DNA of 64,000 nt from Phyllobates terribilis (taxonomy: Eukaryota). Below, piece after piece: positions 4,792-63,264 of the stretch (the first letter of the stretch is position 1; each line of letters begins with the position of its first letter). The stretch is taken from positions 328,166,001-328,230,000 of the forward strand of contig NW_027362763.1 of the NCBI RefSeq assembly GCF_046119375.1, read 5' to 3'. A model generated the notes under the pieces. It had not been told where the DNA came from, ran no database searches, and worked only from the letters and a program-made list of their open reading frames with translations. The position numbers and the translations under genes were made by a program.

Positions 4792-5484
4792 TATGTAGAG
4801 AATCTTGTAGAATACCTTCAATAACTAATAAACAATAGTGTTGAGAGAGCATGCTTGACACTCCTGGTTACTTGCCCGAGCATCTCACTACTCAGGATGT
4901 TCGGCGAGCACCGAGCATTTCCAGGTTACTCGGGCGGCAGCTCTGGTCTCCGCCCTGCACGTTTGGTGCTCTTTACAGAGCCAATGAACATGCAGGGATT
5001 GCCAGCCAGTCACTGTAATGCCACAGCCATGTTGTTTGTGGGCATTACAGTGATTGGCTGGCAGCACAGCGACTCCTCGATTATTTAAAATCGGGCGCCG
5101 CCATCTTGAACACAGTCGCTCTGGATCAGACAGTGTAGAGAGGGTGCTGCTGAGTTAGGGAGAGATATATAGTGCGAAATAGGAAGTGTAGGGTCTCTAT
5201 AGCCTGCCAAATCAAACAAACAGTCCTTCTCAGGATTAATATCCATCCCAGATATCAGGCAGGCAGGCAGGCTGTATATGAGATGCAGTGGTTATACCAG
5301 CAAACGCTGCATTACAGTCCTGTGTGCTCCTGTTGGTCAAATTGCTAGACTTATCACCCTGGTCTCAGGGGCCAGTAAAAAACATTTTTTATTCATCTAA
5401 ATCCTCCATTTTTTTTTCCTCAGCCAGACTGTACAAATACGCGTCTTTTTAACCTTTTTGTATCCCCCCGCCAAAAAATGAAAA

Positions 5485-6185
5485 AAATTGAGCGTGTCTG
5501 TGACTGTTCAGACACCAATATATCTGTTTAAAAGAGTCTGGTGTAGGCCAGAAAAATAGAGCTGTGGTTTTGCAGTTCCACGGGTCAAATCTCTGTATTA
5601 TCCTGCTTTTGGCATTTTTTGCCGTAAAAAAAACTGTAATAGTGTCTTCCTGACTGGTCAGACACCAAGATATCTGTTTAAAAGATTCTGGTGTATGCCA
5701 CAATTCTATAACTGTGGTTTTTCAGTTCCACGGGTCAAATCTCTGTATTATCCTGCTTTTGTAATTTTTTGCCGTAAAAAAAACTGTAATAGTGTCTCCC
5801 TGACTGGTCAGGCACCAATATATCTTTTTAAAAGAGTCTGGTGTAGGCCAGAGAAATATAACTGTGGTTTTTCAGTTCCACGAGTCAAATCTCTGTATTA
5901 TCCTGTTTTTGGCATTTTTTGCTTTAAAAAAAACTGTAATAGTGTCTCCCTGACTGGTCAGGCACCAATATATCTGTTTAAAAGATTCTGGTGCACGCCA
6001 CATAACTATAACTGTGGTTTTGCAGTTCCACGGGTCAAATCTCTGTATTATCCTGCTTTTGGCATATTTTGCCGTAAAAAAAACTGTAATAGTGCCTCCC
6101 TGACTGGTCAGACACCAATATATCTGTTTAAAAGAGTTGGGTGTAGGCCAGAGGAATAGAACTGTGGTTTTCCTCTTCCACAGTT
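5485..6185. repeat. 150-bp tandem repeat (~4.7 copies) in the hAT 5' subterminal region
   Basis: G(A/G)CACCAA(T/G)ATATCT at 5511, 5661, 5811, 5961 and 6111, an exact 150-bp period. Confidence 0.95.
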
Positions 6186-6252
6186 CCAATCTCCTTTTTA
6201 TTACCCTTTTTCCATTGATAGTGCGAGTGTAAGCTATTTTACTTCATTTACA

Positions 6253-8868
6253 ATAGGCAAGGCACGTGGCAAGGGACGTGGAACTGGACGTTCTGGTGAT
6301 GGTGCGTATAGAGGACGGGGCCGTGGCCAAGGTGAAAATGTGCCACAACCAACAGCCACATATTCTCGCTCCCACTTCTTGACCGAATTACTAGGGAAGC
6401 ATACTACAACACCAGTATTGCGAACTGATCAGTGTGAACAGGTTATTAATTGGATAGCAGATATTACTTCAAGTTACCTGGGCACCACCACCTCCGGTCT
6501 GTCTTCCACACGGTCAGGTTTTAGTAGCTGTAAGTCTCGACCGCATACTCCTCCTCACCCTGATGCTCCTACCTCCCACCATGCCGAGTGTCATCAGAGA
6601 GCAACTGATCCCACACTTGGACACTCTGAAGAGCTGTTCACTGGAAAATTTCCATATTTGTGCCCCTTGCCTGCTCCGCTTGAAGTGGTGGAAGAGGAGA
6701 TCCCATGTAGCGATGCCCAAATATTTGAACAGCCACGGCCACAGGAAGTCGACGCTGGCAATTTGTCACAAGAGGTGGACGATGACGAGACACAATTGCC
6801 ACGAAGTAAGGAGGAGGATCGTGGTGCGCAAGTGAAAGAGGAGGAGGTGGTGGATGGTCTAGTAACTAACCAAACGTGGCAGGAGGACACGCAGAGCGAG
6901 GCCAGCAGAACACAGGGGGAGGGAGGCAGAGTACCCCAACAGGCAGGAAGAAGCAGTGTGGTGGCCGCACACAGAAGGTGGGCAACAGTTCCCCGTAACA
7001 CCAACATGAGGGACGTTGCCATTACAACCGGTAGGTCTTCCAGAGTCTGGAATTTTTTAAAAGACTCTGTTGATAACCCCAAAAAGGCCATTTCTACCAC
7101 TTGCCATGCCAGCATCAGCAGGGGTGACAAAACTACCAGCCTGACCACCACCATCATGATCAGGCACATGGCAGCAAAGCACCCGACTTTATGGGACAAA
7201 CCCTAGGGTCCACGACCAGTGTCAGCGGGTGTCACCACTGCTTCTTCCACTGTTGTGCGTGTAATGGAACCCCCTGTTGTGCTTGCAAGGCAATTCCCTG
7301 TCCATACTGCATGCAAAGATGCCCCCTCCTCTCAGTCTTCACTTGTTATGGCAGTTTCTCAAGAAAGAGCATCAACGTCCACGTCCCAACGCAGCGTTCA
7401 ATTGTCCATATCCCAGACCTTTGAATGAAAGTGCAAATTCGCAGCCAATGACCCACAGGCCACAGTCCTAAATTCGCACATTTCACAACTGCTTGCATTG
7501 GAAATGCTGCCTTTTACGCTGGTGGAGACGGAATCCTTCCGCAACCTTATGGCGGTGGCCGTCCCTCGGTACTCGGTCCCCAGCCGACACTACTTTGCCC
7601 GGTGTGCCATCCCCGCACTACACAAGCACATGTCCCAAAACATCTGCCGTGCCCTCAACAACGCAGTTACTGGGAGAGTCCACCTGACAACAGACACGTG
7701 GACAAGTGCTTAAGTGCTTGTGGCCAGGGACGGTACATCTCCCTGACGGCACACTGGGTAAACATAGTGGAAACCGGGACCCAGTCGGACCTTGAGACGG
7801 AACACATCCTCCCCACACCGAGAATTGCGGGCCCTATATCAGTCAGAGTTGCCCCCACAGTGTACAGCTCCTGCGTATCATCATCCTCCTCCTCATGTTC
7901 AGCCTCCATCTCAGATATCACCACATCAGTTACAAGCTGGAAGCACTGCAGTACTGCCGCAGCCAAGTGGCAACAGGCTGTGCTGAAACTCATAAGCTTA
8001 GGTGATAAACCTCACACTGCTTGTGAGTTGTGGACAGCTGTGAAAGAGCAGGCAGATCTGTGGCTGAGACCACTGAACCTACATCCAGGTATGGTCGTGT
8101 ATAACAATGGCCGTAACCTGGTGGCGGCTCTGAGGCGAGGCGAGATCACACACGTACCGTGCCTGGCTCATGTGCTTAACCTCGTGGTTCAGCGGTTTCT
8201 TAAATCGCACCCCGAGTTTCCAGATCTGCTCGTCAAAGTACATCGCCTGTCAGCTCATTTTGGCAAGTCGGCTACAGCTTCCGCCGCCCTTGCTGTGTTG
8301 CAGCAGCGTTTGCAGCTTCCTTCACACCGACTGGTGTGTGATGTCCCCACACGTTGGAACTCTACCCTCCACATGTTGCAAAGTATTTGTTATTTGTGAG
8401 CAGAAGAGAGCAGTTGTGGAGTACCAGCTGCAACAATGCCGTCGATATTCAGGTCAGACTCCACACATAAGACCTCAGGAGTGGACCTGGATGTCTGACA
8501 TATGTACCATCCTCACAAACTTTGAGGAGTCCACCAAGATGGTGAGTGGTGATGTCGCCATCATTAGCGTCAGCATCCCACTTGTCTGCATTTTGCAACG
8601 CTCTCTGCAGAGAATTAAAGAGGTGGCATTGCAGCCAGAATATGATAAGATGGATCAGGAACCCATAATGGGCGATTACACACAGCCCAGCCTCATCTCA
8701 TCCCAACGTGCATTGGGGGACATTGAAGGAGAGGAGGAGGAGGAGGAAGAACAGGAGCTGGTATCATGAGCTGTAGATGGTAGTACCTGTACAACTGTCA
8801 TACAGTCGGTTCAGCGTGGGTAGCCTGAGGACAGGGGGGGAGGAGGAGGAGGAGGAGGAGAGCATGGT
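6253..8868 (+). pseudogene. hAT (Ac/ZBED-like) transposase, family A, 3'-truncated
   Basis: Degenerate BED finger (VWNFL...TTCHASI...MIRHMAAKH), then VPSRHYF, VHLTTDTWTS, CLAHVLNLVV and CDVPTRWNSTLHML. Stops and frameshifts present. The hATC dimerisation domain is absent. Confidence 0.92.
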
Positions 8869-11800
8869 CACTGCAAACTCAATCATTCTTCCAAGGGGCA
8901 TTAAACCGTCTTGTTAAGCTACGGCAACCTCCACCACTTCTCCATGTGGCATTAAAACCGTCTTGTTAAGCTAATGCGACCTCCACGTCTCTTCCAAGGG
9001 GCATAAAAACCGTCTTGTTAAGCTACTGCGACCTCCACGTCTCTTTCAAGGGGCATTAAAAACATCTTGTTAAAGTACTGCAACCTCCCCGTCTCTTCCA
9101 AGGGGCATTAAAACCGTCTTGTTAAGCTACTGCGACCCCCACGTCTCTTCCAAGGTGCATTAAAACCGTCTTGTTAAGCTACTGCGACCTCCACCACATT
9201 TTCAAGGGGCATTGATATAATCTTTTTATACCACTGCGAACGCCACCATTCTTCCAAGGGGCATGAAAACCGTTTTGTTAAGCTACTGCGACCTCCACCA
9301 CTTTTTCCCAGGGGCATTGATATTGCCTTTTTATTCCACTGCGACTTTCATGTCTCTTCCAAGGGGCATTAAAACCGTCTTGTTAAGCTACTGCGACCTC
9401 CACCACTTTTCCCAGGGACATTGATATTGTCTTTTTTTTCCACTGCGACCTCCACGTCTCTTCCAAGGGGCATTAAAACTGTCTTGTTAAGCTACTGCGA
9501 CGTCCACCACTTTTCCCAGGGGCATTAAAACCATCTTGTTAAGCTACTGCGACCTCCACCACTTTTTCAAGGGGCATTGATATTGTCTTTGTATTCCACT
9601 GCGAACTCCACCATTATTCCAAGGGGAATTGAAACCATCTTGTTAAGTACTGCAACCTCCACCACTTTTCCAAGGGGCATTTAAACCATCTTGTTAAGCT
9701 ACTGCGACCTCCACCACTTTTCCAAGGGGCATTAAAACCATCTTGTTAAGCTACTGCGACCTCCACGTCTCTTCCAAGGGGCATTAAAACCGTCTTGTTA
9801 AGCTACTGTGACCTCCACGTCTCTTTCAAGGGGCATTAAAACCATCTTGTTAAAGTACTGCAACCTCCCCGTCTCTTCCAAGGGGCATTAAAACAATCTT
9901 GTTAAGCTACTGCGACCTCCACGTCTCTTCCAAGGGGCATTAAAACCGTCTTGTTAAACTACTGCAACCTCCACCACTTTTTCAAGGGGCATTGATATAA
10001 TCTTTTTATTCCACTGCGAACTCCACCATTCTTCCAAGGGGCATGAAAACCGTCTTGTTAAGCTACTGCGACCTCCACCACTTTTCCCAGGGGAATTGAT
10101 ATTGCCTTTTTATTCCACTGCGACCTCCACGTTTCTTCCAAGGGGCATTAAAACCATATTGATAAGCTACTGTGACCTCCACGTCTCTTCCAAGGGGCAT
10201 TAAAACCATCTTGTTAAGCTATTGCGACCTCCACGTCCCTTCCAAGGGGCATTAAAACCGTCTTGTTAAGCTACTGCAACCTCCACGTCTCTTGTCTCTT
10301 CCAAGGGGCATTAAAACCGTCTTGTTAAGCTACTGTGACCTCCACCACTTTTTCAAGGGGCATTGATATTGTCTTTTTATTCCACTGCAAACTCCACCAC
10401 TTTTCTTAGGGGCATTAAAACCATCTTGTTAAGCTACTGCGACCTCCATCATTCTTCCAAGGGGCATTAGAACCGTCTTGTTAAGCTACTGCGACCTCCA
10501 CGTCTCTTTCAAGGGGCATTAAAAACATCTTGTTAAAGTACTGCAACCTCCCCGTCTCTTCCAAGGGGCATTAAAACCGTCTTGTTAAGCTACTGCGACC
10601 CCCACGTCTCTTCCAAGGTGCATTAAAACCGTCTTGTTAAGCTACTGCGACCTCCACCACATTTTCAAGGGGCATTGATATAATCTTTTTATACCACTGC
10701 GAACGCCACCATTCTTCCAAGGGGCATGAAAACCGTTTTGTTAAGCTACTGCGACCTCCACCACTTTTTCCCAGGGGCATTGATATTGCCTTTTTATTCC
10801 ACTGCGACTTTCATGTCTCTTCCAAGGGGCATTAAAACCGTCTTGTTAAGCTACTGCGACCTCCACCACTTTTCCCAGGGACATTGATATTGTCTTTTTT
10901 TTCCACTGCGACCTCCACGTCTCTTCCAAGGGGCATTAAAACTGTCTTGTTAAGCTACTGCGACGTCCACCACTTTTCCCAGGGGCATTAAAACCATCTT
11001 GTTAAGCTACTGCGACCTCCACCACTTTTTCAAGGGGCATTGATATTGTCTTTGTATTCCACTGCGAACTCCACCATTATTCCAAGGGGAATTGAAACCA
11101 TCTTGTTAAGCTACTGCAACCTCCACCACTTTTCCAAGGGGCATTTAAACCATCTTGTTAAGCTACTGCGACCTCCACCACTTTTCCAAGGGGCATTAAA
11201 ACCATCTTGTTAAGCTACTGCGACCTCCACGTCTCTTCCAAGGGGCATTAAAACCATCTTGTTATGCTACTGTGACCTCCACGTCTCTTTCAAGGGGCAT
11301 TAAAACCATCTTGTTAAAGTACTGCAACCTCCCCGTCTCTTCCAAGGGGCATTAAAACAATCTTGTTAAGCTACTGCGACCTCCACGTCTCTTCCAAGGG
11401 GCATTAAAACCGTCTTGTTAAACTACTGCAACCTCCACCACTTTTTCAAGGGGCATTGATATAATCTTTTTATTCCACTGCGAACTCCACCATTCTTCCA
11501 AGGGGCATGAAAACCGTCTTGTTAAGCTACTGCGACCTCCACCACTTTTCCCAGGGGAATTGATATTGCCTTTTTATTCCACTGCGACCTCCACGTTTCT
11601 TCCAAGGGGCATTAAAACCATATTGATAAGCTACTGTGACCTCCACGTCTCTTCCAAGGGGCATTAAAACCATCTTGTTAAGCTATTGCGACCTCCACGT
11701 CCCTTCCAAGGGGCATTAAAACCGTCTTGTTAAGCTACTGCAACCTCCACGTCTCTTGTCTCTTCCAAGGGGCATTAAAACCGTCTTGTTAAGCTACTGT

Positions 11801-12141
11801 GACCTCCACCACTTTTTCAAGGGGCATTGATATTGTCTTTTTATTCCACTGCAAACTCCACCACTTTTCTTAGGGGCATTAAAACCATCTTGTTAAGCTA
11901 CTGCGACCTCCATCATTCTTCCAAGGGGCATTAGAACCGTCTTGTTAAGCTACTGTGACCTCCACGTATCTTCCAAGGGGCATTAAAACCATCTTGTTAA
12001 GCTAGTGCAACCTTCACGTCTCTTCCAAGGGGCATTAAAACCATCTTGTTAAGCTACTGCGACCTCCACCACTTTTTCAAGGGGCATTGATATTGTCTTT
12101 TTATTTCACTGTGAACTCAACCATTCTTCCAACGGGCATTA
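8869..12141. repeat. 52-bp satellite array (~63 monomers, two monomer variants)
   Basis: Monomer CCAAGGGGCATTAAAACCGTCTTGTTAAGCTACTGCGACCTCCACGTCTCTT (e.g. 9722 to 9774). The variant carries GATATTGTCTTTTTATTCC. Confidence 0.97.
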
Positions 12142-12599
12142 CATTTCCTCCTAATTTTAGTCAGCTTTTCCTTTTCAATGAATAGGTGGAAACTAAGGGA
12201 GACCCACTCCCCAATAATGGGTAGAAGGTTTTTAGTATGCTGTAATCCACGTCTGTTTCAAGGGGAATTGCAGTTCCTCATAATTTTTGGACAGACTTCC
12301 ATTCACTGCTTAGGCCAACAGTGCACAGGAGTCCCAGTTTCTATAAAAGGAAAAAAACATTTAGTTAAGGCCCTATGACCTCCATGTCACTTCCAAGGGG
12401 CATTGGAGTGCCTCAAAATTTTTTGTAGGCATTGCACTCACTGTATGCCCTATAACTGTGTAGCCGAACTGCTCCTTTTGGTACAGAAGCATATCCTACA
12501 AGACGTGTGGTTGACTGGCCTGATATTGATGTGAATGGTCCCTGTTCCTCCTGCTTTTTCTCCTTTGCCACCACCTCATCCATCATTCATCACCTGAAG

Positions 12600-13750
12600 C
12601 TTTGTTTTAACGGGAGTCATAGAACTGGGATAGTGGCAGGAAAACATCCAGCAATCCTCGGAGGAGGTAGAATATGCGCCAAAACGCTGACAACCTCAGG
12701 CCTAGCCGCTACTACATACATGCGCTTGCATTCCAAGAAAACAAAGCAGATGGTAACTTCTATCATCATCATCATGCTCCTCACCTTGGCACTCTCAACT
12801 CCCCTGATGGACAAGCCAGGGCCCACCGGATGAGTCTGGTTCTCTGGTTGGCTCGTCCAATGCTGCCCTAAAGCAGACCAGGCTAAGAAAAGTGGCGACT
12901 GGACCGTTTATGGACTCCTGGCTGCCCCCAAGCGGCAGGGGACCGTGTGTGGACATCAGGCCGCGGAGCGGCTGGGGACCGAGTGTGGACATCCGGCCGC
13001 CCCCTGGCGGCTGGGGGCCGAACGTGGAAACCCAGCCGCCGTGCGGCTGGGGACTGAGTATGGATACCAGGCCGCCGACGCAGCCATGACATGGTGGCCA
13101 GCGTCTGCCTCCACATGACTAAAAGGCCCATCTTCAAGTGCAAGCAAGCTAGCAGTATGGTATTGCAGCCTGGGGGTGGGTGGGTGGCAGGTTGCACACT
13201 TACACTTGCATTCCAAGAAAACAAAGCAGATGCTAACTTCTGTCATCATCATCATGCTCCTCATCTTGGCACTCTCAACTCCCCTGATGGAGAAGCCAGG
13301 GCCCACCGGAGGAGTCTGGTTCTCTGGTGGGCTTGTCCAATGCTGCCCTAAAACAGGCCAGGCTAAGAAAAGTGTGGGGAGAAGTTCCAAGGAGAAATAG
13401 GGGTGGCTGGGGACCGAGTATGGACACTCGGCTGCCCCCTGGCAGCTGGGGACCGTGTGTGGACACCCGGTCTGCCGGGGGGCTGGGGACTGAGTATGGA
13501 TACCTCGCTGCCAAAGCAGCCATGAGGTAGTGGCCAGCTTCGGCCTCCTCCAAACTAAAAGGCCCCATTTCAAGTGCAGGCTAGCAGTATGGTATTGCAG
13601 CCTGGGGGTGGGTGGCAGACTGCATACTTGTGCTTGCATTGCAAGGAATGGGGGAGGTACAATTGAACACTACTCTGGGATAAGGACTTGCACGGGAATA
13701 GTTGCAAGTCTGCATCTTCTGATGCGGCAAGGATGACTTCTGATGGGCAC
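12600..13750 (-). repeat. Shuffled module region with antisense hAT transposase fragments and a ~37-bp minisatellite
   Basis: Direct repeat 12725-12895 / 13207-13375. The reverse complement encodes ECKCK..CHPP..LLALE..PYSVPS, homologous to 7426-7585. Confidence 0.75.
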
Positions 13751-14099
13751 ACTTTTAGGCAGTGACCTGTGTGTCAGAGGTGCTTCCAGGGGTCTTCCCC
13801 ATGCTGTTCCCATGTCTTTTCAGCACTGTATGCATGTGTCACACAGCACATGGCCAGATAAGATTGTAAAATGTTAAAATGACATTTCCCGGTGAATGCA
13901 TTTGTCACGGTTGAAAGCAATACAAAAGTGCAAAAATGCATAAAAAATGCTACTTGTGAACATAGAACAAGGTGTGGAGGAGTATTTTTGTTTTTGGTTA
14001 TTTATTTTACCTTATACAGAAGTCTTTACCCTGGAAAGGATGTTCCTTAACATATTTCACAGGAAAACCGTTTCAGTTTCGTTTTTGAACATTTTTTTT

Positions 14100-14432
14100 T
14101 AGCTCAGCCTCACCTCTCCCTACACTGCATGATTGCAGAGTAGACTGTGATCAACACAGCAACACTAGGTCTGATATAGACCTGATCACGCTGTGCGGCC
14201 AGCCATTCACTGTAATGCCACAACCAACATGGCTGCGGCATTACAGTGTGTGGCAGACAATCCCTGCATGTTAATTGGTGCTCTAAACAGCGCCAAACAT
14301 GCAGGAATGGGACCCGGTTTCCCGCCGAGCAACCCCGAAAATACTCGGCGAGTGCCGAGCATCTCGAGCATCTCGAGCAGTGAGATGCTCGGGTGAGCAC
14401 AGAGCAGTAACAAGCATGCTCGCTCATCACTA
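14100..14432 (-). mobile_element. 5' terminus of hAT element H
   Basis: Colinear with 50770-51087. Ends in GCATGCTCGCTCATCACTA (TIR) at 14432. Confidence 0.85.
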
Positions 14433-14760
14433 GTTCCTAACGTTATACAGCAGGGACATCTCAGCTTGAAATAGATTGGAGAATATATTGTTTGTTATAC
14501 AAGCCTCATCTACAGTAAAAAAAAAATACTTTAGTTCCTAACGTACAACAGGGACATCTCAGTTTGAAATAGTTTAGCGAATATCTCCTATGTTATATAG
14601 GCGTCATCCCCATTAAAAAAATAAATCTTGTTCGGTTTTTAACACAATACAGCAGAACATCTCAATTTGAAATAGTTTGGAGAAAATTATCTATGTTATA
14701 TAGGCGTCATCCACAGTAAGAAAAAAAACACTTTGTTCGGTTAGTAACGTTATACAGCAA
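14433..14760. repeat. ~100-110-bp subterminal tandem repeat of family-B hAT (B1)
   Basis: Repeated GTTCCTAACGT...ACATCTCAGTTTGAAATAG...GTTATA. The same unit occurs reverse-complemented at 38590-39720. Confidence 0.8.
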
Positions 14761-14799
14761 AACATATCTTACCTTGTCATTTAGTGATGTTAAAATTCA

Positions 14800-17700
14800 G
14801 ATGTGTGCAGAGCTGTTGGAAGGGGGAATAGGCTTGGTATTCAAGGTATACGTGGGGTAGGTGGTAATGTTAGTGAAAGCACTAGTGAACCATCACCATC
14901 AAGTCTTATCCAAAGACAACTGACAACTTCTGTTACTGGATGGGCTACTCCACTCCCTTTCTTTTGCAGCTGCACAGCGATAGGCCTTGTTGATAAGGGC
15001 CAGAAAGAACAGGTGCTCAAGTGAATTGCAAGTGCTGCATCAAGTGTCCTCTCCTCTTCTTCCTCCACCTCAACATCAGACACAGTACAGTCCACAGAGG
15101 TGGCACCACAATTACCCTTGCCTCCCCCCATGTCACAACTGTCCAGGCACCCAACTGACTGTAGTGAAACACAGATGGGCGAGTCTGGAGAACTGTTTAC
15201 CCATTCTATACCATGGGCATCAGAAGTGTACTCCAAACATTCACAGAGACAAGAAGAGGAGGAAAGCATCTGCACCGATGGCCAAAATTTTTTACGCTAG
15301 ATTTAGGGCAGGACGAAGTAGGATCCGAGCAGATTCCTGACCCTCGTCACGAGATGTTAACCACCAGGGAGGGAGGTGATCCTGATGCAGACTGTACTGT
15401 GCTGTCAGGGCAACAAGAGGAGAAGGGTCACTCTGAGGGCGAGGAATGGGAAAACATATTGGATGATGACATGGTTGAAAATCCTACTTAGTTGGAACCC
15501 AGAGTCACGCAGCCGAGTAGCTCATCTGAGGAGGTGGAGGAGGAAGACGAGGAGGTTACCTTCTGCCCTACATCGCAGACACGGAGTGATGCAAGCACAA
15601 GGAGCCCTCCATCCTTAGCAACAACTGTGGCTGTGGCCAGCGGCAGTCATGGGTCTGCAGCTCGCAGCGGTGGCAATGGTTGCCTAGCCTGGGCCTTTTT
15701 GGAGACCGCAAAGGATGAAACAACTCGCGTTATCTGCACACTTTGCAAGAAAAAACTCAGGGGAAAAGTGCAATAATTTGACTACTACATGGATGAACCT
15801 TCACATGCACACACAACATGCATTATGCTGGGAATCTCACTGCGCTGAAATGCAGACCAGCGGACCTCAATAACCAACAGCTGCCCCATTAACCGCAGCC
15901 TCTGCTTCTTCCTCCTCCTCTGTTATCGTGCCAAGTATTGGCACGCAGGTCTTCCACTGCAAAACTTTTGGTTCTCTACTCGCTCCAGTCAGGCTGAGTG
16001 AGAGCCCGTCAGCTGTAACGGAAGCGGACATGCCTGCTGTCTTGGTTTCAACGAACACACCGCACGTTTCTCAATCCACAGTAATATCTGCACCTGGTCC
16101 TCAATAACAGTCCAGCAGTTTGCCTGTTTCACCGTACTCCGCCCTTTCTCAACACTGCAGCTAGCCCTCAGTCCCACAGTTGTTGTCAAGTAAAAGATTG
16201 TTTCATCCTGCACATGACAAAGCTAACAGGTTGAACTGCACAACCTCAAATCTGTTCGCCACGGAAATGCTGCCTTTGTGCCTGGTAGATACAGAAAGCT
16301 GATGGCCATCGTAGTCCCCCAGTGCCAGTTGCCCAGTCACCATTATTTCTGTAAGAAAGCTGTGCCTGCACTACACTAGCATGTCGCAGACAATATCACC
16401 CATTCTTTGACTAAATCTATATCTGCCAGGGTGCATTTTACCATAGACACCTGGACGAGTAAGCAAGGCCAAGGACATTACATCTCGCTGACTGGGCACT
16501 GGGTGAATTGGTGGCTGGTGGCAAGCAAGAAGGGGCTGCTTCACAAATCTTGTAATCCCCAAGGCTTACAGAAGAAACCTCTCTCTGTTTCATACTTCCT
16601 CCACTGCTTCTGCATCCTCCTCCTCCTCTAGGGCCTCCACCTGCGCAATCAACCTCTGCCTTAACGAGACACACGTTCCAACAGTGCAGAGCGAATGCAG
16701 ACCACCTCCGTACTGCACAGCCAGGGCTCACCGCAGTCAGGCAGTCTTCAAGTTAATATGTCTTGGAGATTGCAGTCATACAGCTGAAGAGTTGTGTACA
16801 GCTCTCTAGGCTCAGTTTCAGCAATGGGAAGGCCATGTGCGATAACGGTGCAAACCTGTTGGTGGCCCTACACCAAGGCCAACTCACACACGTGCCTTGC
16901 ATAGCTCACGTCCTCAACCTGGTGGTACAGTGATTTTTCTGCCACTATCCCGGCCTGGGTGAGCTGCTTCTGAATGTACAGAAGCTGTGCGCATACTTCA
17001 TGTCATCGACTTGCATCGATACAGAGGTCTTTGTCTATGCCAGTTAACAGGTTGATATGCGATGTGCCGATGTAGTGGAATTCCACTCTGCACATGTTGC
17101 AGTGACTGTAGCAGCAGCAACGAGCCCTGGCGCAGTATGTTATGTCGTATAGCCTAAGCTAACGCAGTACGGATGTGGGGAATATCACATTTACAGAGTA
17201 GGAACAGATTAAGGACCTCTGCACCTTTCTGCACAGTTTTGAAATGGCTACTAAACTAGTTTGCGCTGATAATGCCATCATCAGTATCACTATTCCAGTC
17301 GTCTACATGTGAAGAAGATTTTGAATAGCATGCGGCAGGAGGTGGTTGTCCCAGAAGAAGAGGAGGCTGCATAAGAATGTCCAGACTGTCGTCACACAGG
17401 CGGATATCAAGTGATGGCGGCTTCCTTTGATCGAGGGGGTTTGGTGGTACCAGACATACTGCTAGTGAAGGTGCAAGAGCCGAGGAACAAATGGAGGAGG
17501 AAAAGGTGATGGGCAAGCAACAGTCAGAAGATGAAGAGGATAATCATCCCCTCGCTGTTGAACATGGTTGGCAGGAGGGGCCGGAGGAAATATGCATCAG
17601 TGTTACGCAGCCAATCATAGAGTCTGGCTTTGGACAACCTGGAAGAGCCCGATATATAAGTGCCTTCTTACTGCACTTCCTGCAACATGATCCCCGTATA

Positions 17701-18363: not shown

Positions 18364-18489
18364 GCGATGTTGTAGTTTTTAGTGTGCTGTATTGATCTTG
18401 CTGAATTGCAGTCTGTGATATGGCTTGTGTGCCTGCTCTTGCTGTAGTAATTAGGCCCTAATTTTTTGAAATGTGGAGAATACAAATTT

Positions 18490-33258: not shown

Positions 33259-33359
33259 TATACCATGGTAGAAAGAAAACCAATTTCTATTTTATCATGT
33301 GTTCCCCTGTGAGAACAATATCTGCACTAAACAATGAATTTCAATAGATTATAAGTATT

Positions 33360-44531: not shown

Positions 44532-45944
44532 TTACATATCCTACTTTGCTGTCTTCTTTCAGAAACAGATATGGAATTGTGTAATAACTGCCTAGATCTA
44601 TAAGATCTGTGCACCATTTCGGCTGTATGGATCTACCAACTTTTAGCAGGGGAAGCACAATGTGCATGCTATGCCTCCCTACAGCCACATTGTGAGGATA
44701 CAGGAGGGGAGTCCTCACCACGTTCTCACTGTCACTGTACTGATGCTACAGTGACAGTGAGCGCAATGAGCAGACTCCTTTCCTGCTCTCACTGTGACTG
44801 CGATAAAGAAAGCAGATCACACTATGAGAATTCTCAAATCCCTCCTCCCTCGACCCCCTCCATAAGTGTGTCACTGATGCCACTCCAGCAAAGAGCTCTC
44901 TATGACTATGGTAACATTATAAAAGCAATGATAGTGTTTTACAGATTATGCACCTGCTCTTCTGTATTTTTGTAAATTTCATATCCAACATTATGACAAA
45001 TTATACAAAAGTAATAGAAAGTTACTCTCTAAAAGCCACCTGATCTTAATAAAATAATCTATATGACCAGATCATATGAATGTTTCAGAGATGATCTAGA
45101 TGAGAAAAATTGCTAATCATAATCCTAGTTGTTTATGACAGCAAAAAGGGTTATATAACTATTTTCATTTCTAGAATCATGGTAAATAGTGTTTATCTTA
45201 AAGGGGTTGTCCTACAATCAAAACTGCTGTTTCATTAACATCAAATGGAAAGTTTCTAGTGATGAGCGAGCACTAAAATGCTCGGGTACTCAATGCTCGG
45301 GTCGAACAAATTGGAATACTCGGGTGCTCGACCCAAGCAATGAGCCCAATGTAAGTCTATGGGAAACTCAAGCATTTTTCAGGTCGCTCCCCCCGGCGGT
45401 TTGCAGAGGGCCTAAAAATTGCCCAAATCCATGGGAACAGTGCTCAAATGACATGGGAACAGCATGGGGAAGACCCCTGGAAGCATCTCTGACTCCCAGA
45501 TCACTGCTGTCAACAACGTGGTCAGAGTATTACGCCACTTTTACGGACTCACAATAAAACATACAAAAACGAAACCAAAATGGATTTTCCTGGGAAATAT
45601 GTTAAAGAACATCCTTTCCAGGGTAATGACTTGTATATAAGGCAAAATAAATAGCCCAAGTTGTGGAGGAGTATTTTTGGTTTTGGTTATGTTCGCACGT
45701 ACGTAACGTTTTTGATGCATTTTTGCACTTTTGAATTGCTTTCAACCAAGACAAATGCATTCACCAGGAAATGTCATTTTAACATTTTACAACCTTATCT
45801 GGCCATGTGATGTGTGACACATCATCAGACACATACATACAGTGCTGAAATGACATGGGACCAGCATGGGGAAGACCTCTGGAAGCATCTCTGACTCCCA
45901 GGTCACTGCCTAAAAGTGTGCCCATCATAAGTGATCCTTGGCGC

Positions 45945-47110
45945 ATGCAAAGATGCCTCCCGAGCGTGCACCTGTCGTTGCAGACTTGCAACAATCACCG
46001 TCCACATCCTTGTCCCACTGCAGCGTTCAGTTGTCCCTACCCCATTCCTTGGAATGCAAGTGCAAGTATGATGCCAGCCACCCACCAACCCACCAACCCA
46101 CAGGCTGCAATACTATACTGACAAATTTTTGACAGCTGCTTGCACTTGAAATGTGGACTGTTAGGCTCGTGGAGGCGGAAGCTTTTCACAACCTCATGCT
46201 GACGGAGACCGGGTATCCATACTCGGTCCCCAGCCGCCACTATATTTCCCGGTATCGCCTCCGCCTTCCACAAGCACGGGTCCCACAACATTATCCATGC
46301 CTTACTCAGTGCACTTACTGGGAAGGACCACCTAACCACAAACACGTGGCCAGCAGAATGTTGCCAGGGACGGTACAGAGCCAGTCCACAAGTTTTTTTT
46401 CTAAGAGTTGTATTTAGCTCGGTGAAAGGACTGGCATAGAGGGAAAAAGTATGTACCCTGCGTGTCATTTCTCCCAGGAAGTCCTGTAATTGAGCTTGTT
46501 GCAGAAGCAATGGCAGCCCGTCCAACATCAACTCTCACTTGACGGTCTTGCTTTGACACACACACATCTTTCTTTGCGCTTTTAATTTCTTGAATACAGA
46601 GTTGGACAAAGGCCTGATCTGTAATGCGTTTTGAGAAATAACATGCATAAGCATGGCCAATCCACATTAAAAAAGCTGCCATAGAGTGTCCGGGAACCTT
46701 CCCCCACACTTTTCTTAGCCAGGGCTGCTTTTCGGCAGAGTTGGACAGGCCCACCAGAGAAACGTTGCTCCTCCGGCGGGCTCTGGCTTCTCCTTCAGGA
46801 GAGTTCATAGTGCCGAGGTGAGGCCATGATGATGATAGAGGCCACCATCTGCTTAGTTTTCTGTTACTTGGAATGCAAGTGCAAGTATGCAGCCAGCCAC
46901 CCACCCACCCACAGGCCACAACACTAAACTGTCAGATTTCTGGGCAGCTCTTTGCACTTAAAATATGGCCTTTTAAGCTTGTGGAGGTGGATGCTTTTCA
47001 CAACCTCATGCCGGCGGCGGCCGGGTGTCTATACTCGGTCCCCAGCAGCCACTATATTTCCCGATATTGCCTCCGCCTTCCACAAGCACAGGTCCCACAA
47101 CTTTACACGT
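45945..47110 (+). pseudogene. Two transposase CDS fragments antisense to element C (45945-46378, 46860-47110)
   Basis: Homologous to 7309-7735 (KCK..ASHP..LLALEM..PYSVPSRHY..LTTNTW). Element C's own transposase is on the minus strand. Confidence 0.8.
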
Positions 47111-47487
47111 GCCCTCCCCAGTTGTATTTAGCTCGGTGAAAGGACTGGCATAAAGGGAAACCATATCTACCCTGCGTGTCATTTTTCCCAGGAAGTCCTC
47201 TAAAGCTGCTTGCACTTGAAATGTGGCCTGAACATTACTGCTGGTACTTTTCTATGGGAATTTGCTTGCCTCCTACCAGCCTGGAATATTTCCAGCAAAC
47301 TATGGTACAATACCATGGTATTAGCACTGCCCCCAGGACCAGAAACGAAGCCATCACCAATTTCCTTCTCAGGAATTTTATTTGGTAGACTGAGTGGCTG
47401 CCCAAATACATTTTCTCACAAAGGAGCTGAAGATAGAGTGGCAGTAGGTGCAAGTTTCTCCAGCCTGTTAGATATTAGAGGGTGAAC

Positions 47488-47620: not shown

Positions 47621-48559
47621 AAAAAGCAGCAATAGAGTGTCTGGGAACCTTCCCACACTTTTCTTAGCCAGGACTGCTTCTCGGCAGGTTTGGACGGTCC
47701 CACTAGAGAATCCTCTGGTGTGCCTTGGCTTCTACCTCAGGAGAGTTCAAGATAGCGCTAAATTTGCAGCTGCTATGGGGCTCTTGAGCGGGTGAGAAAG
47801 GTTAGCCATCAGAATCAAATCCTCTGGTGGGCACAATGTTTTTCAATCTGAAACAGCTTCTCAGTGGAAGTTGTATTTCACCACAGCCATATTCTTTAGC
47901 TCGGTGAAAGGACTGGCATAGAGGGAAACCGTATCTACCCCGGCTGTCATTTCTCCATCACCAGGTTCTGCCCATTGTCACACATGACCATGCCTGGCTG
48001 TATGTTCAGCGGTGAGAGCCACAGATCATGCTGCAGTGTTACAGCTTTCAACAACTCTGCAGCGCTGGGCGGTTTGTCAAGTAAGCATTAAGCAGGTTAT
48101 CTTCAGCACAGCCTGTTGCCGCTTGGCCATGGCAGTGCTGCAGTGCTGTCAGCTTGTGACTGATGTGGTCATTTCGGAGATGGAGGAGGAGGTGCATGAG
48201 CTGAACAATGTGATTACATTGAGGTTAAATTGGTGATGCTGTTTTTTACACTAAAGAAAGATCCTGTATATTTTTTTTAAGTTATTTTTTAAGACAAATG
48301 CATTCACTGGGAAATGTCATTTTAACATTTTACAACCTTATCTGGCAATGTGGTGTGTGACACATCAGACACATCCTTTTTTATTTATGATGAAGGGACA
48401 CTGAAAGTCATAAAGCCTACTTTTATATTGACATCAGATGGCCCTTACTATTCTTAAAAGGCCAGCAGTCGGCCCTAGCTATTCTTAGAGATTCATCAGC
48501 CGGCTATGCTTTTTTGTTCCCATTATTAACAAGTGGGTCTCCTATACTGTTATTGCATA

Positions 48560-49130
48560 TCCAGTGACTGCAAGGGCTGCTAAAAATTTTGACGCAACCC
48601 AATACCCCTTTGAAGAGACATAGAGGACGGTCTCGGTAAAAAAAATGTTCCCATTATAAAGGAGTGGTTCTCCTATAGTGGTAATGCCCATGCTGTGACT
48701 ACAAGGGCTGGCAAAATTTGGGAAATTCGCCACTAAGAATTTAAAGATACATAGAGCAGGGCCACAGTAACAAGTATGATATGTTCCCATTAGAAAGGAG
48801 AGGGTCTGCTATACAGTTATAGGGTATGCAGTGAGTCCAACGGCTGACCAATTTTAAGAATAACCCCACTAAGAATGTAAAGACACACAGAGCACTGCCA
48901 CAGTAACGGCAAATTCCCATTAGAAAGGAGAGAGTCTCCCATAGTGTTGGCCTATGCAGTGAATGCAAGGGCTGCCAAAAATTTGGAGGCACTTCAATGC
49001 CCCTTGGAAGAGATGTGGATGAGGGCCTCATAAAAAAATGTTCCCATTAGAAAGGAGCTGGCCTCCTATACTTGTAATGCCCATGCACTAAGTGTATGGG
49101 TGACAAACATTTACCCCTGGGGGGATATAA
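48560..49130. repeat. ~133-bp degenerate tandem repeat in the family-A 3' region
   Basis: ATGTTCCCATTA(G/T)AAAGGAG recurs near 48645, 48781, 48915 and 49039. Confidence 0.7.
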
Positions 49131-49346: not shown

Positions 49347-50100
49347 TTATGTTACGCTGCTATCATTCGGTGGTGTTGAGGTTTCTGGCTCAATCCAGCC
49401 CTTGTTCATTTTTATAAGAGCATTTTCAATTAACAGGCGGATGCGCTTATCAGTTATAATTCTACCAGCGGCACTAAAAACCCTCTGTGACAAAACGCTG
49501 GCGGCAGAGCAGGCCAGGACCTCCAAGGCATAGAGAGCCAGTTCATTCCATGTATACAGCTTGGATACCCAATAATTATAAGGCACAGAGGAATCACGGA
49601 GGACGTTGGTACGGTCGGCAAGGTACTCCCTCAGCATCTTCCCAAACTTTGCACTCCTTGTGAGAGTACCCCGCGTCTCAGGGCCTGTGCGATGGGAAAG
49701 TCTCCCAGAACTTTGACAGTGTTCCCCTGCCTTTGCTGGATTGAAGTTGTGTCTCTCTTGCCTGTTCTCCTTGGTTGTCCAATGAAGTGTGCCCTCTGCC
49801 GACAGCGTTTACAGATGGGAATTTTTTTAATAGTTCCGCAACAAGGGCCTTCTGGTACTGCCCCAATTTTGTAAACCTGTCCGTCTCAGGAATAAGAGAT
49901 ATAAAGTTCTCCTTGTAGCGTGGGTCAAGAAGTGTCACCACTCAGTAATGACTGTCACCCAAAATTTTGAGAACGCGTCATGGGAAAGACAGCGTAACAT
50001 AAACTCAGCCATACGTGCCAGACTTCTAACAGGCAAGACTTCCGTGTCCTCACCAAGAGGATGACTGACCGTGGTCTCCTCCTCCTCCTCCTCCTCCTCC
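49347..50100 (-). pseudogene. C-terminal part of family-A hAT transposase including the hATC dimerisation domain
   Basis: TLLDPRYK and YWVSKLYTWNELALYALEVLACSAASVLSQRVFSAAG. Confidence 0.9.
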
Positions 50101-50339: not shown

Positions 50340-51239
50340 TATGTGATCCGTTTGACGGAGAAAACACAGTTTTAAATAGTTGGATTTCGAGCGCTCTAAT
50401 ATGGAAAGGATCTGGCTGTATTCTGCAGTGCCAACAAGCAAACCAAGCAACTGGCGCAGAAAAACGGTGTTCTCTGGATTGCTTTTTAAGCAAATAATGA
50501 GGATTAAGATCCAAAGAAAGGTATTCCTGGCCCCTGAGACCAGGGCCTTTGTATAGAAATATCTAACAGCAGCAGAAGGCAGAATTGGAATGGAGCCTCT
50601 TGTGCTATATGCACTGCAGTCTGCTATATACACCGCCTGCCTATACACCCTGTCTGATATATCTGCAGATGGATTAGTCCTCAGAAGGACTGTTTGTTAA
50701 GATGGATATGTGTAATGTATGGTTTTTCTCCCTAAACTACCTAATACACGATAAAATCTCTCCCTGACACAGCAGCAGCTCTCCCTACACTGTCTGATCC
50801 GGAGTAACTGTGACGAGCATGGCGACACCAGGTTTGATATAGACCTGATGACGCTGTACCTCCAGCCAATCACTGTAATGCCCACAACCAACATGGCTAC
50901 GGCATTACAGTGCATGGCAGGCAATCCCTGCATGTTCATTGGCTCTCTAAAGAGCACCAAACATGCAGGGAGGGGACCTGAGTTCCCGCCCGAGCAACCC
51001 CGAAATACTCGGCGAGCGCCAATCATCTCGAGCAGTGAGATGCTCGGCCAAGCACCGAGCAGTAGCGAGCATGCTCGCTCATCACTAAAAGTTACCATTT
51101 GTACAATTGGATGTATTTGTATCTGACCATGTAGAATTGCTTAAACTACTGTTCCGCACATGCTGTTTGCACTGATCTCACAGAAGGTGGAAAGATAAGT
51201 TAATATTCTTTACTAATGGAGCTAACACGGGCTATTACA

Positions 51240-58205: not shown

Positions 58206-58206
58206 G

Positions 58207-61035: not shown

Positions 61036-62641
61036 TAGTGATGGGCAAACCCATGACTGTTTTCCATACAGGGGTACATATTAGTAATGACAGAACACTA
61101 AATGTTCTCAACTTAGTGCTTGAGCGGTTTCTCAAATCCTACCCAGATCTGCCAGAGCTGCTTGTGAAAGTACAACGTGTGTGTGCCTATTTCAGAAAGT
61201 CAGCTATAGCTTCCGCCACCCTGTCAGTGCTTCAGCAGCATTTGCAGCTTCCAGCTCTCCGACTATTATGCTATGTCACCACATGTTGGAAATAAACATT
61301 ACAGATGTTGGGAAGGATTTGTGAGCAGAAAAGGGCAGTTATTGAGTACCATATTCATCGGCATTCAGATCAGCAAGGAACTATACAGCCCAGCCTTATC
61401 TCATCTCAATGCGGATTGGGTGATAATGAGTAGGAGGAAGAGGAAGAGGAGAACATGGACAGTCATCCTCTTGGGGAGGACAGGGAACTCTTGGCTGTCT
61501 TGGAAGTCTTGATACCCCTTTCAGTCTGTGGGAAAGCTATATGAGTTTTGCTTGTTGACCTTCAGTGGCCTAAACCGTGGCTTTGCTGATGCACGTTATT
61601 TCTCAAAATGCATTGCAGATCAGGCCATTGTCCAACTCTTTAGTGATTAAATTCAAGGAGTAAAAAAGATGTTTGTCTGTGACTAAGCACCACTGAGTAG
61701 TGTGAGCTGATGATGGATGGGCTGCCATTGCTTATGCAACAAGCTGCATTAGAGGAATTCCTGGGAGAAATGACAGCTGGACTAAGCACCACTGAGTAGT
61801 GTGAGCTGATGTTGGATGGGCTGCCATTGCTTATGCTTATGAAATGACAGCCGGAGTAGATATGATTTCCCTCAATGCCAGTCCTTTCACCGAGCTAAAG
61901 AATATGGCTGTGGTGAAATACAACTCTAACCGAGAAGCAGTGTCAGACTGAAGAACATTGGGTCCACCAGAGGATTTAATTCTAAGGGACCACCTTTCTC
62001 TCCCACTAAAGGGCCCCATAGCCGATGCAAGGTTTGCGCTATGAACTCTCCTGAAGGAGAGCCAGGGCCTCTGGTTCTCTGATGGGCCCGTCCAACCCTG
62101 CCAAGAAGCTGCCCTGGCTAAGAAAAGTCTGTGGACTGGCTCCAGTGAGAGGTACCATCCCTGTCCACATTCACTTGTCCATGTGTTTGTTGTTAGGCGG
62201 ACCTTCCCACTAAGTGCACTGGGGTGGGCACGGGTAGTGTTCTGGGACCCGTGCTTGTGGAAGGCGGGGATGACACCGGGAGAAATAGTGGCAGCTGGGG
62301 ACCGAGTATGGAGACCCGGCCACCGCCATGAGGTTATGAAAAGCTTCCACCTCCACAAGCCTAAAAGGCAACATTTCAAGTGCAAGCAGATGTCCAGAAA
62401 TGTGACAGTTTAGCATTGCGGCCTGTCTGTGGGTGGGTGGGTGGCTGGCTGTATACTTGCGCTTGCATTCCAAGTAATTGAAAACTAAGGAGATGGATGG
62501 CCTCATCATAATCACAACCTTCAAGGTTTGCGCTATGAACTCTCCTGAAGGAGAAGCCATGGCCCACCAGAGGATTCTCCTGTTCTCTGGTGGGTCTGTT
62601 CAACCCTTCCGAAAAGCAGCCCTGGCTAAGAAAAGTCTGAG

Positions 62642-62759
62642 GGGGAAACCCACACAAACATGGTGAGAACATCTAAAATGTTTGCAGATGTTGTCCTTGG
62701 TGGAATTTGAACCCAGTGCTGCAAAGATTCAGTGCTAACCACTGAGTCACTGTGATGCC
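62642..62759 (-). mobile_element. V-SINE 5' part
   Basis: The reverse complement has A box TGACTCAGTGG, B box GGTTCAAATTCC and AAGGACAACATCTGCA. Confidence 0.75.
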
Positions 62760-63264
62760 CTCTCTGTTCTCCCTCTGATATCTAACATGCTGGAGAAACT
62801 TGCACCTACTACCACTCAGTATCTTCAGCTCCTTTATGGGAAACTAATATATTTGGGCAGCCACTCAGTCTACCAAATAAAATTCCCGAGAAGGAAATCG
62901 TGGATGGCTTCGCTGCTGGTACTGGGGGAACTGCTAATTCCATGACATCACGCCATACTTCACTGGAAATATTCCAGGCTAGTTGGAGCCAAGCTGATTA
63001 CCATAGAAAAGTACCAGCAGCAAGCTAAGGAAATGGTGGCCTCTATCATCATCATGATCTCGGCACTATGAACTCTCCTGAAGGAGAAGACAGGGCCCAC
63101 CAAAGGATTTTCCAGTTCTCAGATGGGCCCATCCAACCCTGCCGAGAAGCAGCGCTGGCTAAGAAAAGTCTGTGGGAAGGTTCCCAAACACTCTATTGCT
63201 GCTTTTTACTGTGGACTGGCTTCAGCGATCCATAAGATTGCAATCTATATGATCCCTTTAATGG

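What the first reader, a model, noticed from the sequence alone, without database searches (positions are those of the whole stretch)
13040..13750. Three hAT copies carry antisense fragments of their own transposase gene in the 3' region (Mu killer-like layout)
In A (+), C (-) and D (+), a 200-430-bp piece of transposase CDS lies downstream of the gene and in opposite orientation. The piece runs from KCK..HP through PYSVPSRHY towards the catalytic DTW. Locations: 13040-13230 and 13480-13750; 45945-46378 and 46860-47110; 62150-62470. The shared polarity and shared linker modules suggest a heritable family feature rather than random debris. Read-through would give fold-back or antisense RNA against autonomous copies, as with maize Mu killer. 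Inference: a transposon-encoded self-silencing or copy-number control module. By eye the fragments in A are only ~65-70% identical to A's own gene, so they may target a sister family.
Basis: partly seen in the sequence, partly recalled or inferred. Interest (0 to 1): 0.7.

Follow-up and report, generated by a model that had tools for sequence, protein, structure and literature searches.

The report
Frog hAT transposon carries backward self-fragment
An old, very abundant cut-and-paste (hAT) transposon lineage of a poison-frog-type genome carries, behind its transposase gene, a backward-facing scrap of that same gene repeated in a small tandem array; the layout is real and inherited, but nothing shown here says it silences anything, and it looks like a passively carried rearrangement.

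Summary
In three decayed copies of one hAT family, a 190-430 bp piece of the transposase coding sequence lies downstream of the gene and inverted. The copies are A 4836-14432 (+), C 51087-45553 (-) and D from 61101 (+). The piece matches A 7300-7745, perhaps to 7831. blastn against A's gene gives E 1e-42 and 1e-56 for the C and D pieces. A's own pieces match A's gene weakly (59-65%, E 0.003) but match C's pieces clearly (E 1e-65 and 1e-133).

All fragments form one clade apart from the gene (support 100/99) and share derived indels, so one old event was inherited. Sequence like copy C, including a linker/fragment junction, is abundant in contigs of four runs carrying two organism labels.

The self-silencing reading is not supported:
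- The fragments decay neutrally and are no better conserved than their linkers.
- No exact run with the only in-cis gene exceeds 17 nt.
- C and D lack the sense partner.
- C's cassette also holds a sense-oriented gene scrap.
- The lineage became abundant while carrying the cassette.

No strand-resolved RNA or small-RNA data could be reached.

Best reading: a self-derived filler rearrangement, later duplicated in tandem and hitch-hiking. The scan's earlier notes report other cargo in hAT elements of this genome, not this cassette.

The parts
4836..5414 (+). Copy A: probable 5' terminal module R. Its terminus begins TAGTG, and its first ~320 bp recur inverted at 14100-14432.
   Evidence: The terminus motif occurs 3 times in the window (0.02 expected). 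No matching 8-bp target duplication was seen.
5481..6201 (+). Copy A: 150-bp tandem repeats in front of the transposase gene.
   Evidence: It matches the family architecture noted earlier in this genome (s1-198884).
6340..8870 (+). Copy A: transposase pseudogene. It is BED-finger, ZBED4-like, has at least 3 frame changes and lacks the C-terminal hAT dimerisation part.
   Evidence: (87% to a Phyllobates terribilis protein)
7300..7831 (+). Copy A: the gene segment that the inverted fragments correspond to.
8889..12141 (.). Copy A: 52-bp satellite (62 units) where the gene's C-terminal part should be.
   Evidence: A 27-bp core is shared with C's 3' repeats.
12125..12478 (+). Copy A: 3' non-coding repeats, homologous to C 49086-48512.
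12648..13750 (-). Copy A cassette. Inverted gene pieces lie at 12648-12680, 13043-13220 and 13482-13750. Linkers lie at 12712-12894 and 13245-13388. A 36/75-bp minisatellite derived from the PYSVPS-coding end lies at 12901-13077 and 13391-13473.
13759..14098 (+). Copy A: 3' region shared with C 45909-45553. The first 148 bp (seg1/seg2) are 91-95% conserved between copies.
14100..14432 (-). Copy A: module R inverted (probable 3' long terminal inverted repeat). Its terminus at 14432 abuts a second hAT family.
50340..51087 (-). Copy C: 5' terminal module R, with its terminus at 51087.
49350..50100 (-). Copy C: C-terminal part of the transposase gene, with the hAT dimerisation domain (49577-49350). 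It joins R through an internal deletion.
   Evidence: PF05699, 27.4 bits, cut-off 21.4
48512..49086 (-). Copy C: ~130-bp 3' repeats (= A 12125-12478).
47959..48186 (-). Copy C: isolated sense-oriented gene scrap (= A 7903-8123) at the head of the cassette. Both of its edges are copy-specific breakpoints.
   Evidence: Loose ends of other copies run on into coding sequence.
46864..47128 (+). Copy C: inverted fragment 2 (= A 7419-7668).
45943..46399 (+). Copy C: inverted fragment 1 (= A 7309-7737). It runs straight into the 3' region.
45553..45942 (-). Copy C: 3' region (= A 13750-14098). Homology with A ends at 45553.
61101..61520 (+). Copy D: gene remnant (= A 8170-8870). It is cut on its 5' side next to the 3' end of the second hAT family.
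62143..62533 (-). Copy D: inverted fragment, the best preserved (76% nt to A's gene, about 63% aa to P0001, one frameshift).
61578..63220 (+). Copy D: mosaic of cassette modules shared with C (62-bp unit start, ~120-160-bp linker L, ~200-bp P, ~400-bp M2).

Best explanation
The cassette is a passively inherited internal rearrangement of one lineage of a large (~10 kb) ZBED4-like hAT transposon in a dendrobatid-type frog genome.

Inferred origin:
- Once, long ago, a ~450-530 bp stretch of the transposase coding sequence was copied in reverse into the 3' non-coding region. That region lies between the post-gene repeats and the 3' terminal region.
- The stretch runs from just after the BED finger to the first catalytic 'DTW' motif.
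- The most likely cause is template switching during repair of an excision gap. An alternative is a truncated self-insertion in opposite orientation.
- These events are of the kind that give Ds-type elements their scrambled filler DNA.

Shown here:
- The piece plus a linker then became a short tandem or mosaic array with a variable number of units.
- In copy A its end grew into a minisatellite.
- The whole arrangement was spread by transposition to high copy number.
- Today's copies are dead, and the fragments drift neutrally.

An element-sense transcript that reads through the cassette would contain RNA antisense to transposase mRNA. That is a by-product of the geometry, not a demonstrated function.
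For: - One origin: the fragments form a clade apart from A's gene (100/99, stem 0.17 changes/site). They share derived indels such as a (CCCA)n insertion.
- Inherited position: in A and C the order is 3' repeats, then cassette, then 3' region. The distal unit continues into the 3' region collinearly. Only three family termini exist in the window, and none lies between gene and cassette. No inverted repeats flank the units.
- Scrambling, not design: C's cassette starts with a sense-oriented gene scrap (48186-47959) whose two edges are copy-specific breakpoints. A lacks the gene's C-terminal part, which C retains. Modules are shuffled between C and D.
- Neutral decay: differences among fragments are flat over codon positions (0.24/0.21/0.22). 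Identity between copies is the same in fragments (72-85%) as in linkers and gene pieces (71-83%).
- Abundance: 335,584 contigs of one DNA run lie on the 5.7-kb C stretch at 80% or better. That is about 1.3% of the run's contigs. All 30 bins are covered in four runs. A contig of another organism label bridges the linker/fragment-2 junction (46768-46949). Unit-number variants occur (joint 46239 to 47016).
- Context: earlier notes on this genome report hAT copies carrying foreign scraps (18S, dnd1, LGI2). This fits a family prone to filler capture; I did not check those notes. Filler DNA in hAT Ds elements is documented in PMC3260210.
Against: - The origin mechanism is inferred. No microhomology or breakpoint signature was established.
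- I could not show that A is one clean insertion. The 8 bp flanking 4836 and 14432 do not match.
- C lacks module R at its 3' end, and its homology to A stops exactly where R begins in A. Whether R is the true 3' terminus therefore stays open.
- Absence of function was not shown either. No strand-resolved RNA or small-RNA data were available.
- Dead copies cannot show whether the fragment matched its own gene closely when the lineage was active.
- Thermodynamically, the C and D fragments could still form a long imperfect duplex with an A-type mRNA (z -26 and -27).
Confidence: 0.66

Rival explanations
1. A self-encoded antisense or hairpin module. Read-through transcription from the element's own promoter yields RNA antisense to transposase mRNA. 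In full-length copies it would yield a fold-back. This would feed siRNA or piRNA production and damp the family or a sister family.
For: - The geometry is right in all three copies.
- The cassette was transmitted through many transpositions.
- C and D fragments can still form a long imperfect duplex with A-type mRNA (dG -483 and -439 against about -238 and -211 for shuffles).
- Inverted hAT or Mutator pieces do trigger silencing in plants (PMC3440606; bioRxiv 2020.01.07.897926; bioRxiv 2024.06.24.600476).
Against: - There is no RNA evidence of any kind (contigs only, 'RNA' a guess).
- Exact complementarity to the only cis gene is at most 17 nt, and identity is 59-65%.
- C and D have no sense partner.
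- The fragments are not conserved above their linkers and decay neutrally.
- A sense scrap travels in the same cassette.
- The lineage reached very high copy number while carrying it.
- The known silencer loci are single, immobile rearrangements, not features of a mobile lineage.
- Selection on a transposon does not obviously favour self-silencing.
Confidence: 0.1
2. The fragment-plus-linker unit is an independent repeat that only lies next to hAT copies. It might be a separate non-autonomous element or a satellite derived from a hAT gene. It would have reached its present places by its own insertion or by array expansion.
For: - The units are tandem or mosaic and vary in number.
- One module (M2) also lies beside a gene scrap of the second hAT family at 28431-28848.
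- M2 has outlying depth in one run (bin 47501-47691).
Against: - No terminal inverted repeats or target duplications flank the units.
- The distal unit joins the 3' region at the same point in A and C.
- The cassette sits between the same two element parts in A and C.
- The orientation relative to the gene is the same in all three copies.
Confidence: 0.14
3. A, C and D are products of local segmental duplication within this 64-kb region. The shared layout would then say nothing about the transposon family.
For: All three lie within 58 kb in a region full of duplicated blocks.
Against: - Homology between A and C stops at the element's edge, and the flanks differ.
- The copies differ by 18-30%.
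- Tens of thousands of contigs from several runs and organism labels match the stretch, including the cassette and a cassette junction.
Confidence: 0.04

Closest known systems
Maize Mu killer (PMC3440606)
   Same: A partial copy of a transposase gene lies inverted relative to the gene, so read-through transcription could give antisense or hairpin RNA.
   Different: - Mu killer is one immobile locus with a near-perfect long inverted duplication. It is transcribed from a flanking gene and is shown to make siRNAs and to silence MuDR in trans.
- Here the inverted piece is a feature of a mobile, highly amplified lineage of another superfamily, in an animal.
- Identity to the only cis gene is 59-65%.
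- Transcription, small RNAs and silencing are all untested.
Maize Ac/Ds composite insertions made by alternative transposition (bioRxiv 2020.01.07.897926), and Antirrhinum Tam3 Stabiliser loci (bioRxiv 2024.06.24.600476)
   Same: Both are in the hAT superfamily. In both, rearranged or inverted pieces of the element itself are the structural basis of small-RNA-mediated repression.
   Different: - Both are single loci, and dsRNA and small RNAs were demonstrated for them.
- The Stabiliser small RNAs come from terminal transposase-binding regions, not from coding sequence.
- Neither is inherited by transposition.
- The frog cassette shows no evidence of expression.
Ds-type rearranged derivatives of hAT elements with filler DNA (PMC3260210)
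   Same: - The transposase gene carries internal deletions.
- Scrambled internal pieces, some element-derived, are carried along.
- Presumably non-autonomous copies are amplified.
   Different: - The filler here is a defined inverted piece of the element's own coding sequence.
- It became a tandem array and is shared by a whole, very abundant vertebrate lineage.
- The repair mechanism is inferred, not shown.
Satellites and minisatellites seeded inside transposons (earlier notes on this genome: s1-198884, s1-241580)
   Same: Internal parts of these frog hAT elements expand into tandem arrays. Examples are the 150-bp repeats before the gene, the 52-bp satellite, and here the fragment-plus-linker units and a 36/75-bp minisatellite.
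   Different: The repeated unit here contains coding-sequence-derived DNA in reverse orientation.

Membership tests
hAT superfamily transposon | Transposase homologous to hAT / ZBED-type transposases | tested here: met
   87% identity to a 'zinc finger BED domain-containing protein 4-like' of Phyllobates terribilis (E 1e-126), plus other frog hAT-type proteins.
hAT superfamily transposon | C-terminal hAT dimerisation domain (PF05699) | tested here: met
   copy C 49577-49350 scores 27.4 bits (cut-off 21.4). The domain is absent from copies A and D.
hAT superfamily transposon | BED zinc finger at the N-terminus | tested here: inconclusive
   PF02892 scores 19.8 bits against a cut-off of 20.6 (E 8e-4) in A 6340-7206.
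hAT superfamily transposon | Terminal inverted repeats and 8-bp target-site duplication | tested here: inconclusive
   Termini beginning TAGTG lie at 4836, 14432 and 51087, with ~320-bp inverted arms in A. The 8 bp flanking 4836 and 14432 do not match (3 of 8). C has no 3' terminus.
Mu killer-type silencer (inverted duplication that makes hairpin RNA) | Long, near-perfect inverted duplication of transposase sequence within one transcription unit | tested here: not met
   - Only copy A has both arms.
- They are 59-65% identical and 5.8 kb apart.
- The longest exact run is 10-11 nt for A's own pieces and at most 17 nt for any piece.
- C and D lack the sense arm.
Mu killer-type silencer (inverted duplication that makes hairpin RNA) | Transcription through the inverted repeat | not testable with these tools
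   every available run is kept as contigs, without strand or level. The label 'RNA' for X14 is a guess. Poly(A)-signal scans are uninformative.
Mu killer-type silencer (inverted duplication that makes hairpin RNA) | Small RNAs from the repeat and trans-silencing of active copies | not testable with these tools
   No small-RNA data could be reached. The caps of both read tools are used.
Ds-like rearranged derivative with filler DNA | Internal deletions of the transposase gene | tested here: met
   - A lacks the C-terminal ~250 codons that C keeps.
- C lacks everything between module R and A-equivalent position 8836.
- D keeps only the equivalent of A 8170-8870.
Ds-like rearranged derivative with filler DNA | Scrambled internal pieces, in either orientation, at non-native positions | tested here: met
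   Inverted pieces occur in A, C and D, and a sense scrap lies at 48186-47959.
Ds-like rearranged derivative with filler DNA | Mobilised as a unit (same structure at many unrelated sites) | tested here: inconclusive
   The cassette and one junction are abundant in contigs of several runs.

The most novel reading that the evidence does not exclude
A vertebrate DNA-transposon lineage spreads while carrying a built-in antisense copy of the 5' catalytic part of its own, or a sister lineage's, transposase gene. Every sense-transcribed copy would then be a precursor of piRNAs or siRNAs against autonomous elements. That would be a mobile, self-propagating version of Mu killer. It would act as copy-number control, or as a weapon of non-autonomous copies against their master.
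Probability: 0.08. Interest if true: 0.75.

Novelty: new member of a known kind. Interest (0 to 1): 0.3.

Why it matters
If the passive reading is right, this is a clean vertebrate example of three things:
- hAT elements scramble their own sequence.
- Such scraps seed tandem arrays.
- A rearranged lineage can still reach a high copy number in a giant frog genome.

This is useful for repeat annotation. Backward transposase scraps will confuse gene callers and orientation calls.

It would matter more if small RNAs proved to come preferentially from the cassette. All known 'killer' rearrangements are single immobile loci in plants, so a mobile one in a vertebrate would be new. The test is simple once gonadal small-RNA data for this or a related frog are mapped.

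Tried and rejected
No long-range view of other copies was possible.
- Word search with the ORF that spans D's fragment and its neighbour module, hoping for proteins that bridge the junction in other genomes: no hit.
Notes on other cargo gave context only.
- Rfam and tRNA scans of the whole window: nothing. This rejects a known RNA gene or a tRNA-derived SINE as the linker.
- Search for inverted repeats around the units: none. This argues against independently mobile nested elements.
- Search for other self-derived pieces in the linkers by blastn word 7 and tblastx against the rest of the element: only the 7300-7831 segment recurs.
- Search for the same trick in the second hAT family of the window (14433-19150 and 38800-33279): no inverted self-fragment.
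- An 8-bp target duplication for A: not found.
- Poly(A)-signal positions: uninformative.
- Depths from read laying were not used as copy numbers, as the tool warns. Only where contigs lie was used.
- The large HMMER search and the structure tools were not used. No claim here rests on them.

Full report
**What the window is**

The window is vertebrate, repeat-rich DNA without gaps. The longest open frames are transposon genes.
- The transposase in the finding is a BED-finger, ZBED4-like hAT protein.
- Its best relative is a protein of the poison frog Phyllobates terribilis (87% identity, E 1e-126). Further hits come from other frogs.
- Poison-frog genomes are known to be very rich in transposons, hAT among them (PMC11152451, PMC6278860). 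I took only that general point from these papers.

The window also holds:
- a second hAT family (14433-19150 and, inverted, 38800-33279);
- a Ty3/gypsy-type LTR element (53015-59278);
- a Tc1-type gene remnant.

**Check of the observation**

At nucleotide level, A's coding sequence matches the pieces as follows:
- 7309-7737 vs 45943-46377: 68%, E 1e-42.
- 7419-7656 vs 46867-47116: 69%, E 1e-23.
- 7455-7745 vs 62426-62143: 76%, E 4e-56.

A's own pieces are only marginally similar to A's gene (65%, E 0.003). They are, however, clearly homologous to C's pieces (E 8e-65 and 3e-133).

The gene remnant of each copy runs the other way:
- A: gene 6340-8870 (+), pieces (-).
- C: gene 50100-49350 and 48186-47959 (-), pieces (+).
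- D: gene 61101-61520 (+), piece (-).

**Anatomy**

Copy A probably spans 4836-14432 (9.6 kb). Its parts, in order:
- a terminal module R whose first ~320 bp recur inverted at the other end. The termini begin TAGTG, and the motif occurs three times in the window against 0.02 expected;
- 150-bp repeats in front of the gene;
- a frameshifted gene that stops at 8870;
- a 52-bp satellite;
- 3' repeats at 12125-12478;
- the cassette at 12648-13750;
- a 3' region at 13759-14098;
- module R again.

No matching 8-bp target duplication was found, so the limits stay probable.

Copy C is best read as one element, 51087 to 45553 on the minus strand. Its parts, in order:
- module R;
- an internal deletion;
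- the C-terminal part of the gene, with a hAT dimerisation domain (PF05699, 27.4 bits);
- ~130-bp 3' repeats homologous to A 12125-12478;
- a 228-bp sense-oriented gene scrap;
- the cassette;
- the 3' region.

Copy D keeps only the equivalent of A 8170-8870, followed by cassette modules, and then runs off the window.

The cassette is a mosaic of a few module types:
- the inverted fragment;
- a 62-bp unit start;
- a 120-160-bp linker;
- a ~200-bp module (P);
- a ~400-bp module (M2).

Their order and number differ between C and D. In A, the end of the fragment that encodes 'PYSVPS' has expanded into a 36/75-bp minisatellite.

Only the 7300-7831 segment of the element recurs in the cassette. The linkers match nothing else in the element.

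**History**

A tree of the fragment region, with the second family's gene as outgroup, puts all five fragments in one clade apart from A's gene (support 100/99).
- The stem of that clade is 0.17 changes per site.
- A's two fragments are sisters (100/99).
- The fragments share derived indels, for example a (CCCA)n insertion.

So one inversion-duplication was inherited. The tandem units were later duplicated or homogenised within lineages.

Differences between A's gene and the states shared by the C and D fragments are enriched at third codon positions (0.18/0.11/0.28, p 0.024). The source gene and A's gene therefore diverged partly under coding constraint.

Among the fragments the differences are flat (0.24/0.21/0.22), so they have decayed neutrally since.

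Identity between copies is much the same in fragments, linkers and gene pieces (71-85%). The fragments are not specially conserved.

**Spread**

Contigs of four public runs were laid on copy C (45400-51100) at 80% likeness or better.
- All 30 bins are covered in every run.
- In one DNA run 335,584 contigs were laid, about 1.3% of its contigs.
- In a small run with another organism label the share is about 1.7%.
- A contig of that second organism bridges the junction between linker and fragment 2 (46768-46949, 85% alike).
- Joints such as 46239 to 47016 indicate variants with other unit numbers.
- Loose ends at 47959 and 48186 run on into normal coding sequence in other copies. The edges of C's sense scrap are therefore copy-specific breakpoints.

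Depths were not read as copy numbers, as the tool warns.

These data show that cassette sequence is widespread. They cannot show long-range structure, strand or expression.

**Function**

Neither could be tested, because all runs are contigs and the caps of the read tools are used.

What can be tested speaks against a maintained function:
- The only copy with both arms (A) has 59-65% identity between them, and exact runs of 10-11 nt. No fragment shares more than 17 exact bases with A's gene.
- C and D have no sense arm.
- A sense scrap sits in the same cassette.
- There is no extra conservation.
- The lineage became very abundant while carrying the cassette.

The same polarity in three copies is by descent, so it is not independent evidence.

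On the other side, an RNA carrying the C or D fragment could still form a long imperfect duplex with an A-type mRNA (z -26 and -27 against shuffles). When the lineage was young the match may have been much better. The idea is therefore unproven rather than excluded.

**Comparison with known systems**

Mu killer (PMC3440606), the Ac composite insertions (bioRxiv 2020.01.07.897926) and the Tam3 Stabiliser loci (bioRxiv 2024.06.24.600476) show that inverted pieces of a DNA transposon can trigger its silencing. Two of the three are hAT elements.
- All are single immobile loci in plants, with near-perfect repeats.
- For all of them RNA evidence was obtained.
- The frog cassette fails the one defining feature I could test, a long near-perfect inverted duplication. 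It should not be filed with them.

It fits the Ds-type picture much better. Ds-type elements have internal deletions plus scrambled filler DNA, carried along by transposition (PMC3260210). Earlier, unchecked notes of this scan report hAT copies of this genome carrying 18S, dnd1 and LGI2 scraps, and internal satellites. These match that picture.

**Verdict**

The feature is real and inherited, and the function is unproven. The most likely reading (about two in three) is a self-derived filler rearrangement that became a small tandem array and hitch-hiked.

Probabilities for the other readings:
- a real antisense regulator: about 0.1;
- an independent repeat merely lying beside hAT copies: about 0.14;
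- purely local duplication: about 0.04.

Noticed in passing
window 13759-13906; also 45909-45748, 45507-45437, 48374-48291: A 148-bp stretch of the 3' region (seg1 + seg2) is 91-95% identical between copies A and C, while everything around it is about 74%. Isolated halves flank the lower part of copy C in permuted order: seg2 at 48374-48291 and seg1 at 45507-45437. It may be a cis element conserved in the master copies, a gene-converted patch or a trace of a tandem duplication. It is unexplained.
   Followed up: partly
window 12901-13077 and 13391-13473: A 36/75-bp minisatellite grew from the end of the inverted fragment that encodes 'PYSVPS'. On the minus strand it reads as repeated 'SVPS/HTRSPAA'-like open frames with no family match.
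   Followed up: partly
window 8889-12141 vs 48993-49019 and 12125-12478 vs 49086-48512: The 52-bp satellite of copy A shares a 27-bp core with the ~130-bp 3' repeats that follow the intact C-terminal gene part in copy C. The satellite sits where A's C-terminal coding part is missing. This agrees with the other first-reader note on this window.
   Followed up: partly
window 53015-59278: A Ty3/gypsy-type LTR retrotransposon on the minus strand. Its LTRs (53015-54037 and 58213-59278) are 91% identical. A 610-aa frame carries RNase H, integrase and chromodomain, and a 283-aa frame carries reverse transcriptase. It is inserted into a repeat whose uninterrupted form is at 40374-41010.
   Followed up: no
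window 49984-50365: This part of copy C has by far the highest summed contig depth in all four runs. It probably explains why many small runs hold about a fifth of the stretch's words. It is a very abundant short repeat, not identified.
   Followed up: no
window 47501-47691 and 28431-28848: Cassette module M2 also lies next to a gene scrap of the second hAT family (28929-29479). It has an outlying depth in the run guessed to be RNA. It may be a separate repeat caught in the cassette.
   Followed up: no
window 3139-3352 and 4581-4794: A pair of 214-bp inverted repeats, 96.7% identical, encloses about 1.2 kb just left of copy A's terminus. It looks like a younger DNA transposon.
   Followed up: no
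window 14431-14768 and 38622-39765: The second hAT family begins with ~100-bp tandem repeats. Copy A's right terminus (14432) lies directly against, or inside, this array.
   Followed up: no
window 26009-26593: An open frame with Sleeping Beauty-type HTH and Tc3 transposase domains (a Tc1/mariner remnant). It is flanked by ~200-bp inverted repeats with copies at 25710-25916, 27027-27227, 31686-31893 and 33058-33265.
   Followed up: no
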